A stretch of DNA of 64,000 nt from Octopus sinensis (Eukaryota). The position numbers were made by a program, and so were the translations under genes. The stretch spans positions 9,609,360 to 9,673,359 of the forward strand of contig NC_043019.1 of NCBI RefSeq assembly GCF_006345805.1, given 5' to 3'. Numbering within the stretch: the stretch's first letter is position 1; each line of letters begins with the position of its first letter. The notes beneath the pieces are model-generated. The model had not been told where the DNA came from. It was given only the letters and a program-made list of their open reading frames with translations, and made no database searches. This document shows, in pieces, positions 58,449 to 58,520 of the stretch.

Positions 58449-58520
58449 TTTCCCTTTTTCTCTTTCTTCCAGGTAAGTTTATCAAGCATTTGTATTGTTG
58501 TTGTTGCAAGCCAGGTAAGA
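58449..58520 (+). promoter_or_regulatory. Candidate recursive splice site with 42-nt RS-exon 58473-58514
   Basis: ttttccctttttctctttcttcCAG|GTAAGTtt at 58472/58473. A second donor CAG|GTAAGA follows at 58514/58515. Branch-like ttaat about 40 nt upstream. Confidence 0.7.

What the first reader, a model, noticed from the sequence alone, without database searches (positions are those of the whole stretch)
58449..58520. Recursive splice site 2 with a 42-nt RS-exon, same strand and same 11-mer as site 1
Seen: a ~24-nt almost pure pyrimidine tract, CAG|GTAAGTTT identical to site 1, and a strong second donor CAG|GTAAGA 42 nt downstream. The flanks are unrelated to site 1, so this is not a repeat copy. 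I found no equally strong site on the minus strand outside repeats. Inference: two ratchet points about 53.6 kb apart subdivide one giant + strand intron, and the matched RS-exon lengths suggest a shared exon-definition constraint.
Basis: partly seen in the sequence, partly recalled or inferred. Interest (0 to 1): 0.8.

Follow-up and report, generated by a model that had tools for sequence, protein, structure and literature searches.

The report
Candidate recursive splice site, giant intron
A textbook "ratchet point" (a splice acceptor fused to a splice donor, with a 42-base throw-away exon behind it) lies in repeat-rich non-coding animal DNA, 53.6 kb downstream of a second one on the same strand; this suggests a very long intron is cut out in pieces as in fruit flies, but no RNA or cross-species data could be reached to prove it.

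Summary
A 23-nt pure pyrimidine tract abuts CAG|GTAAGTTT at 58472|58473. A second donor, CAG|GTAAGA, follows 42 nt downstream. A TTAAT branch-point match lies 40 nt upstream, and the 73 nt before the acceptor contain no AG. In my acceptor+donor scan this is the best composite site in the window. Site 1 (4913|4914) is third and has the same layout, with a 43-nt exon rather than 42. Only one other site exceeds 20 bits. It is on the minus strand, inside a four-copy repeat, and has no suitably placed downstream donor. Markov simulations expect 0.01-0.02 such sites per window, and 0.002 or fewer with a downstream donor. The two sites share only the consensus core, so they are not copies of each other. 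The layout matches the Drosophila intronic ratchet point with a cryptic ~50-nt RS-exon and a stronger ratchet donor. Several things could not be tested: transcription, strand of the host gene, whether both sites lie in one intron, conservation, and the organism. Three protein searches and two DNA scans found nothing. The "matched exon length" argument rests on two values. My verdict is a strong sequence-level candidate and a new member of a known kind.

The parts
58429..58433 (+). Candidate branch point TTAAT for site 2, with the branch A at 58432, 40 nt before the 3' splice-site G
   Evidence: No AG occurs in the 73 nt upstream of the acceptor AG. The assignment is an inference from a motif match only.
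58448..58470 (+). Polypyrimidine tract of site 2, 23 of 23 pyrimidines
   Evidence: Only 0.14% of all 16-mers in the window score as high on the pyrimidine-tract model.
58471..58478 (+). Ratchet-point core AG|GTAAGT. The acceptor AG is at 58471-58472 and the regenerated donor GTAAGT at 58473-58478.
   Evidence: This is the top composite score in the window: 29.4 bits, made of 16.7 for the acceptor and 12.7 for the donor.
58473..58514 (+). Putative cryptic RS-exon 2, 42 nt. It is open in two frames and has TAA at bases 2-4 in the third.
   Evidence: It is the best acceptor-donor pair with an open frame on either strand (27.9 bits). The 164-codon stop-free frame running through it has no Pfam match.
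58515..58520 (+). RS-exon 2 donor, CAG|GTAAGA, at 11.2 bits. It is weaker than the ratchet donor at 12.7 bits.
   Evidence: It is one of only three + strand donors of at least 11 bits in 64 kb. The other two are the two ratchet points.
4881..4885 (+). Candidate branch point TTAAT for site 1, with the branch A at 4884, 29 nt before the 3' splice-site G
   Evidence: The 23 nt before the acceptor AG contain no AG. The assignment is an inference from a motif match only.
4895..4913 (+). Site 1 pyrimidine-rich tract and acceptor, ttttctattttccttgCAG
   Evidence: 18 of 23 upstream bases are pyrimidines, and the tract scores in the top 1.4% of window 16-mers.
4914..4956 (+). Site 1 ratchet donor GTAAGT and putative RS-exon 1, 43 nt
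   Evidence: The composite score is 24.7 bits.
4957..4962 (+). RS-exon 1 donor, CAG|GTAGGA, at 9.4 bits

Best explanation
Site 2 is an intronic ratchet point of the Drosophila type, lying on the sense (+) strand of a very long intron of an unidentified animal gene. Site 1 is a second one. The proposed mechanism is as follows. U2AF and U2 recognise the TTAAT branch point, the 23-nt pyrimidine tract and the AG at 58472. U1 bound at the downstream donor (58515) helps define a 42-nt cryptic exon. The upstream exon, or the product already spliced through site 1, is ligated to 58473. That ligation recreates a consensus donor, xxx|GTAAGT, at the junction. This donor outcompetes the weaker GTAAGA donor, so the 42 nt are removed with the rest of the intron and leave no trace in the mRNA. 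The anatomy of the signals and their improbability by chance are shown. Transcription, strand, order of the steps and skipping of the exon are inferred.
For: The composite consensus (Y)nNCAG|GTAAGT is met exactly at both sites, which rank first and third of all AGGT sites on both strands. Markov models expect 0.01-0.024 sites of this strength per window, and 0.002 or fewer with a downstream donor. Two are observed, on the same strand. Each site has a strong donor 42 or 43 nt downstream. The + strand holds only three donors of at least 11 bits in 64 kb, and all three belong to these two elements. Branch-point matches lie 29 and 40 nt upstream, followed by AG-free stretches. The ratchet donor is stronger than the RS-exon donor at both sites, 12.7 against 11.2 and 9.4 bits. 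This is the relation reported for fly and mammalian ratchet points (PMC8605326). An exon of about 50 nt and a frame-breaking length (43 nt at site 1) also fit that description. The flanks are unrelated and non-repetitive within the window. The window shows no recognisable coding exon, no Rfam family and no long ORF, which is consistent with intronic DNA. RP-sites are enriched on the sense strand of introns longer than 50 kb in insects and sea urchin, so the mechanism is not confined to flies (PMC2773006). There is also weak strand evidence. The + strand has fewer strong donor-like sites (34 against 54, p=0.04) and fewer AATAAA (53 against 67).
Against: There is no evidence of transcription, of the host gene's strand, or of any flanking exon. 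The window could be intergenic or antisense to a gene. Conservation, the strongest computational criterion in flies, could not be examined, because no related sequence was found. The spacing of 53.6 kb with no intermediate site is four to five times the 9-15 kb segments typical of flies (PMC6110457). My PWMs are approximate and are not trained on this organism. Markov nulls underestimate the pyrimidine tracts and repeat-borne motifs of real genomes, as the repeat-borne minus-strand site at 18499 shows. Whether the flanks of sites 1 and 2 belong to repeat families absent from the rest of the window cannot be checked. The strand asymmetries are marginal, and sense/antisense donor differences in other animals are only 5-15%.
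Confidence: 0.6

Rival explanations
1. The sites are expressed exons rather than zero-length ratchet points. In this reading, 58473-58514 (and 4914-4956) are real alternative microexons, poison exons or decoy exons that appear in some mRNAs. They might be handled recursively, like the two 51-nt Ubx microexons, or spliced as ordinary cassettes.
For: Both are the best-scoring acceptor-donor pairs with an open frame in the window. The 42-nt exon preserves the reading frame and is open in two frames. Ubx has two 51-nt RS microexons in a 73-kb intron, and mammals have thousands of expressed RS-exons (PMC8605326). Site 1 has a TGC immediately before its AG. From my own knowledge, this motif accompanies neuronal microexons.
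Against: An ordinary exon has no reason to begin with a perfect GTAAGT, and two of them doing so is very unlikely. Site 1's exon is 43 nt and would shift the frame. One frame of each exon has TAA at bases 2-4. The encoded peptides look random, and the frame through site 2 has no Pfam match. In flies, ratchet donors that are stronger than the exon donor go with complete skipping.
Confidence: 0.15
2. The motifs are non-functional. They may lie in intergenic DNA or on the antisense strand of a gene, having arisen by chance in DNA that is rich in A+T and pyrimidine tracts.
For: No transcription or conservation evidence exists. A comparably scoring site at 18499 on the minus strand arose inside a repeat by a few substitutions, which shows that the genome can generate such motifs.
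Against: Simulations expect 0.01-0.024 such sites per window, and 0.002 or fewer with a downstream donor, against two observed on one strand. A semi-empirical estimate is also very small. Only 4 AGGTRAGT occur on both strands, the pyrimidine-tract scores fall in the top 1.4% and 0.14% of real 16-mers, and donors of at least 9 bits occur about once per 3 kb. The repeat-borne site lacks a donor 30-100 nt downstream.
Confidence: 0.17
3. The sites are repeat-borne. Each would sit in a different transposable-element family that carries an acceptor-donor-like sequence in its consensus but has no other copy in this window.
For: The window is densely packed with SINE-like and other repeats. Two other strong acceptor-like sites, at 1350 and about 1575, are repeat copies.
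Against: No other copy of either flank exists in 64 kb, and the two flanks are unrelated to each other. This reading needs two independent families that both carry a perfect core and a donor at +42/43.
Confidence: 0.05

Closest known systems
Drosophila intronic ratchet points with cryptic RS-exons (Burnette 2005; Duff 2015; Joseph 2018 and 2021, PMC8605326; Pai 2018, PMC6110457)
   Same: Both have the tandem acceptor|donor consensus (Y)nNCAG|GTAAGT and a short cryptic exon of about 50 nt ending in a second donor. In both, the ratchet donor is stronger than the exon donor and the exon content looks non-coding or frame-breaking. Both lie in long stretches free of exons, and several sites can occur on one strand.
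   Different: Use of the site is unproven here. The spacing is 53.6 kb, against typical fly segments of 9-15 kb. The organism is not an insect. The genome is rich in A+T, microsatellites and SINEs, and I take it to be probably a cephalopod, from memory only. Conservation, which defines the fly set, is untested.
Ubx mI and mII recursive microexons (Hatton 1998, as summarised in PMC8605326)
   Same: Both show two short exons of nearly equal length that begin with a donor consensus and lie tens of kb apart on one strand.
   Different: The Ubx exons are 51 nt, preserve the reading frame, are coding and are expressed. Here the exons are 42 and 43 nt, one breaks the frame, and there is no evidence of expression.
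Vertebrate RS-exons (Sibley 2015; Blazquez 2018, PMC6224609)
   Same: Both follow exon-definition logic. An RS-exon is defined first, and then the regenerated 5' splice site competes with the exon's own donor.
   Different: Vertebrate long introns show no sense-strand enrichment of ratchet sites (PMC2773006), and most vertebrate RS-exons are annotated and included. The present sites look like the fly type, which is fully suppressed.
RP-site enrichment in long introns of non-fly invertebrates (Shepard 2009, PMC2773006)
   Same: Composite sites were found by sequence alone in introns longer than 50 kb. The sense-strand excess is 4-22-fold in insects and 8-fold in sea urchin. Here the density is 2 per 64 kb on one strand.
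   Different: No mollusc was included in that survey. Here the strand and intron status are unknown, so the enrichment cannot be computed.

Membership tests
Recursive splice site / ratchet point (fly-type, with cryptic RS-exon) | [quoted passage not shown] (Y)nNCAG|GTAAGT | tested here: met
   23 of 23 pyrimidines followed by CAG|GTAAGT at 58472|58473. This is the top composite score in the window.
Recursive splice site / ratchet point (fly-type, with cryptic RS-exon) | A downstream 5' splice site that bounds a short cryptic RS-exon of about 50 nt | tested here: met
   CAG|GTAAGA at 58514|58515 gives a 42-nt exon. Site 1 has a 43-nt exon. The feature is as described in PMC8605326.
Recursive splice site / ratchet point (fly-type, with cryptic RS-exon) | The ratchet-point donor is stronger than the RS-exon donor | tested here: met
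   12.7 bits against 11.2 bits at site 2 and 9.4 bits at site 1, by an approximate PWM. The ratchet donor's -3 to -1 positions will in reality come from the unknown upstream exon.
Recursive splice site / ratchet point (fly-type, with cryptic RS-exon) | A usable branch point and an AG-free zone upstream of the acceptor | tested here: met
   TTAAT with its branch A 40 nt upstream, and 73 nt without AG. This is a motif match only.
Recursive splice site / ratchet point (fly-type, with cryptic RS-exon) | Lies on the sense strand inside a long intron of a transcribed gene | not testable with these tools
   No exon or host gene was found. The strand asymmetries are weak.
Recursive splice site / ratchet point (fly-type, with cryptic RS-exon) | Splicing intermediates: exon-to-ratchet-point junction reads, a sawtooth read profile, and lariats starting at the ratchet-point donor | not testable with these tools
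Recursive splice site / ratchet point (fly-type, with cryptic RS-exon) | The core is conserved across species above its flanks | tested here: inconclusive
   I tried to fetch orthologous DNA and every attempt came back empty. This shows a lack of data, not a lack of conservation.
Expressed RS microexon (Ubx type) | The exon preserves the reading frame, is coding and appears in mRNA | tested here: inconclusive
   The 42-nt exon preserves the frame and is open in two frames. The 43-nt exon does not preserve it. Expression could not be tested.

The most novel reading that the evidence does not exclude
The giant introns of a mollusc (probably a cephalopod, by my recollection of its SINEs) are removed by fly-type zero-nucleotide recursive splicing through cryptic exons of about 42 nt, in steps of about 50 kb. 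That would extend the mechanism to Lophotrochozoa and to segments several times longer than in flies. The held literature contains no paper linking recursive splicing with octopus or molluscs in substance.
Probability: 0.45. Interest if true: 0.55.

Novelty: new member of a known kind. Interest (0 to 1): 0.4.

Why it matters
If these sites are used, recursive splicing is a general invertebrate solution to very long introns rather than a peculiarity of insects. They would also give two clean, mutable test sites for how exon definition and donor competition work over distances of about 50 kb in a large, repeat-rich genome. For genome annotation, such sites explain sawtooth patterns in intronic RNA-seq and warn against calling the 42/43-nt pieces as exons. 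If they are not used, the pair is a useful example of how far motif logic can mislead.

Tried and rejected
1. I tried to fetch orthologous or identical contigs through ORFs next to the sites. Exact look-ups of 58530-58865(+) and 5007-5264(-) are not on record. A composite of ten stop-free frames around both sites found no homologue.
2. I tried to identify the organism or host gene. The TE-like ORF 26798-27286(-) has no homologue. A composite of the 51 best exon-like pieces plus an RT-like fragment found none either. The composite-query design may have lowered sensitivity.
3. Exact DNA scans of JGI metagenome contigs for both sites found 0 matches.
4. Rfam found 0 families and ARAGORN found 0 tRNAs. 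Pfam on ten ORFs found only a sub-threshold GIY-YIG fragment.
5. A full-text search for SINE sequence strings, meant to confirm the taxon, found 0 papers.
6. The first Markov simulation timed out and was rerun.
7. I rejected a repeat-copy origin of the two sites.
8. I rejected the minus-strand site at 18499 as an equal candidate. It is repeat-borne, its pyrimidine tract is a (CT)n run, and it has no donor 30-100 nt downstream.
9. I rejected the strong acceptor at 1350 as an exon start because it is a repeat copy.
10. I did not use strand asymmetries as proof of the sense strand, because they are too weak.

Full report
WHAT IS THERE. The window is 64 kb of A+T-rich DNA (about 36% G+C) packed with microsatellites and dispersed repeats. 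It has no Rfam family, no tRNA and no convincing long ORF. It reads as animal intronic or intergenic sequence. One repeat (12946-13130, with copies at 24770-24920 and 38943-39098) matches my memory of an octopus SINE. I could not verify this with any tool, so the taxon remains a recollection and not a result.

At the finding's coordinates the + strand reads ...cattTTAATgacaatattttatg tttttccctttttctctttcttcc AG|GTAAGTTTATCAAGCATTTGTATTGTTGTTGTTGCAAGCCAG|GTAAGAagg. Bases 58448-58470 are 23 uninterrupted pyrimidines. The acceptor AG is at 58471-58472, a perfect donor GTAAGT starts at 58473, and a second donor GTAAGA starts at 58515. The enclosed piece is 42 nt. A TTAAT branch-point match puts its A 40 nt before the acceptor, and the 73 nt upstream of the acceptor contain no AG.

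Site 1 has the same layout. It has TTAAT 29 nt upstream, a pyrimidine-rich tract, CAG|GTAAGTTT at 4913|4914, and CAG|GTAGGA at 4956|4957. Its piece is 43 nt, not 42.

IS IT MORE THAN CHANCE. The 11-mer CAGGTAAGTTT occurs only at these two places, both on the + strand. Shuffles expect 0.03 occurrences. The + strand has only three AGGTRAG in all. They are the two ratchet cores and site 2's downstream donor. The minus strand has seven, of which one has a pyrimidine tract.

I scored every AGGT with an approximate acceptor PWM plus donor PWM, built from general knowledge and used only for ranking. Site 2 is first in the window at 29.4 bits and site 1 is third at 24.7 bits. Between them is a minus-strand site at 18499 with 26.6 bits. 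Nothing else exceeds 20 bits.

Sequences simulated from order-3 and order-5 Markov models of the window give 0.010 and 0.024 sites of at least 24.5 bits per window on both strands. With the added requirement of a donor of at least 9 bits 30-100 nt downstream, they give 0.002 and 0 (one search agrees). A semi-empirical view points the same way. The pyrimidine tracts of sites 1 and 2 fall in the top 1.4% and 0.14% of all real 16-mers in the window, and the + strand has only 17 donors of at least 9 bits in 64 kb.

The minus-strand site lies in a repeat with four copies in the window. The other copies read GGGTAACC, GGGGTGACC or GGGGTTGCT at that position. Its pyrimidine tract is a (CT)n run, and it has no donor 30-100 nt downstream. 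It also shows that this genome can throw up such motifs, which keeps the chance hypothesis alive. Sites 1 and 2 themselves are not in within-window repeats, and they share nothing beyond CTTnCAGGTAAGTTT.

WHAT IT MOST LIKELY IS. The anatomy is that of a Drosophila-type intronic ratchet point. PMC8605326 summarises these as tandem acceptor|donor pairs in long introns. Each encompasses a short cryptic RS-exon of variable length, about 50 nt, flanked by a downstream donor. The exon must be recognised first and is then always skipped, because the regenerated ratchet donor is usually stronger than the exon's donor. [quoted passage not shown]

Here the ratchet donors score 12.7 bits, against 11.2 bits (site 2) and 9.4 bits (site 1) for the exon donors. 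The exons are 42 and 43 nt long. One of them breaks the frame, and each has TAA at bases 2-4 in one phase.

The proposed sequence of events is as follows. The 42-nt unit is defined as an exon. The upstream exon, or the product of site 1, is ligated to 58473. This regenerates xxx|GTAAGT. That donor is then used, and the 42 nt go out with the next intron segment. All of this is inferred from sequence, and none of it is shown.

WHAT COULD NOT BE ESTABLISHED. I found no exon or host gene. The best acceptor-donor pairs with open frames in the window are the two RS-exons themselves. The rest look like repeat or random sequence. A composite protein search with the 51 best pieces returned nothing, and Pfam found only a sub-threshold GIY-YIG fragment.

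I found no related DNA either. Exact look-ups of neighbouring ORFs, a composite search of frames around both sites and exact scans of metagenome contigs were all empty. Transcription, sense strand, whether both sites share one intron, conservation and actual use are therefore open.

The strand hints are weak. Outside the RS elements, the + strand has 34 donor-like sites of at least 8 bits against 54 on the minus strand (p=0.04). It also has 53 AATAAA against 67, and T slightly exceeds A. In other animals the sense/antisense donor difference is only 5-15% (PMC2773006), so I do not lean on this.

COMPARISON WITH WHAT IS KNOWN. The closest match is the fly ratchet point with a cryptic RS-exon. 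The spacing differs. Here it is 53.6 kb with no intermediate candidate, while fly segments are typically 9-15 kb (PMC6110457). The organism also differs.

Ubx offers a curious parallel, with two 51-nt RS microexons in a 73-kb intron. Those are in-frame and expressed, which makes an Ubx-like reading a live but weaker rival. Vertebrate RS-exons work by the same logic but are mostly annotated and included. Vertebrate long introns also lack sense-strand enrichment of such sites, whereas insects and sea urchin show a 4-22-fold enrichment (PMC2773006).

No mollusc was in that survey. The held literature has no paper linking recursive splicing with octopus, and only incidental co-mentions with cephalopods or molluscs.

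The "same 11-mer" is the composite consensus plus two T's. In 64% A+T DNA those two T's carry about a 10% coincidence and add nothing. The "matched RS-exon lengths" are 42 and 43 nt. With two values, and a known range around 50 nt, no shared constraint can be inferred beyond the general need for a definable exon.

VERDICT. This is a strong, internally consistent sequence-level candidate for recursive splicing and a new member of a known kind. All functional criteria remain untested. I put about 0.6 on a genuine, skipped ratchet point and about 0.15 on an expressed or poison RS-exon. The remainder goes to unused motifs that arose by chance or within repeats.

Noticed in passing
window 18476-18520 (- strand): A third recursive-site look-alike, caccAG|GTAAGC at 18499, scores 26.6 bits and has a second GTAAGA only 22 nt downstream. 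It lies in a four-copy dispersed repeat whose other copies read GGGTAACC or GGGGTGACC at that position, so it probably arose by a few substitutions.
   Followed up: yes
window 26067-27804: There is a near-perfect long inverted repeat. The arms are 26067-26661 and 27211-27804, about 595 nt each and 98-99% complementary, around a 549-nt spacer. ORF 26798-27286(-) overlaps it and has no Pfam match and no homologues. It could be a mobile element with long inverted arms, a recent inverted duplication or an assembly artefact.
   Followed up: partly
window 12925-13406: A 251-bp unit is duplicated in tandem at 99% identity. It carries a SINE-like element with further diverged copies at 24770-24920(-) and 38943-39098(-). 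I recall the sequence as an octopus SINE, but ARAGORN and a paper text search gave no confirmation.
   Followed up: partly
window 62542-63887: A 1.35-kb (AT)n microsatellite of about 677 copies lowers G+C to 18% at the end of the window.
   Followed up: no
window 39884-40183 (+): An ORF has a sub-threshold GIY-YIG nuclease match (20.4 bits against a cut-off of 22.6). It is probably the remnant of a Penelope-like or similar element.
   Followed up: partly
window 1320-1650 (+): Two diverged copies of another repeat each carry a strong acceptor-like ...ctttcag followed by ataaagtacca. The one at 1350 is the third-best composite site on the + strand, but its donor half is poor.
   Followed up: partly
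whole window, both strands: Strong donor-like sites are fewer on the + strand than on the minus strand: 37 against 54 at 8 bits or more, and 8 against 14 at 10 bits or more. AATAAA is also fewer, 53 against 67. This is a marginal asymmetry that would fit + being a sense strand.
   Followed up: partly
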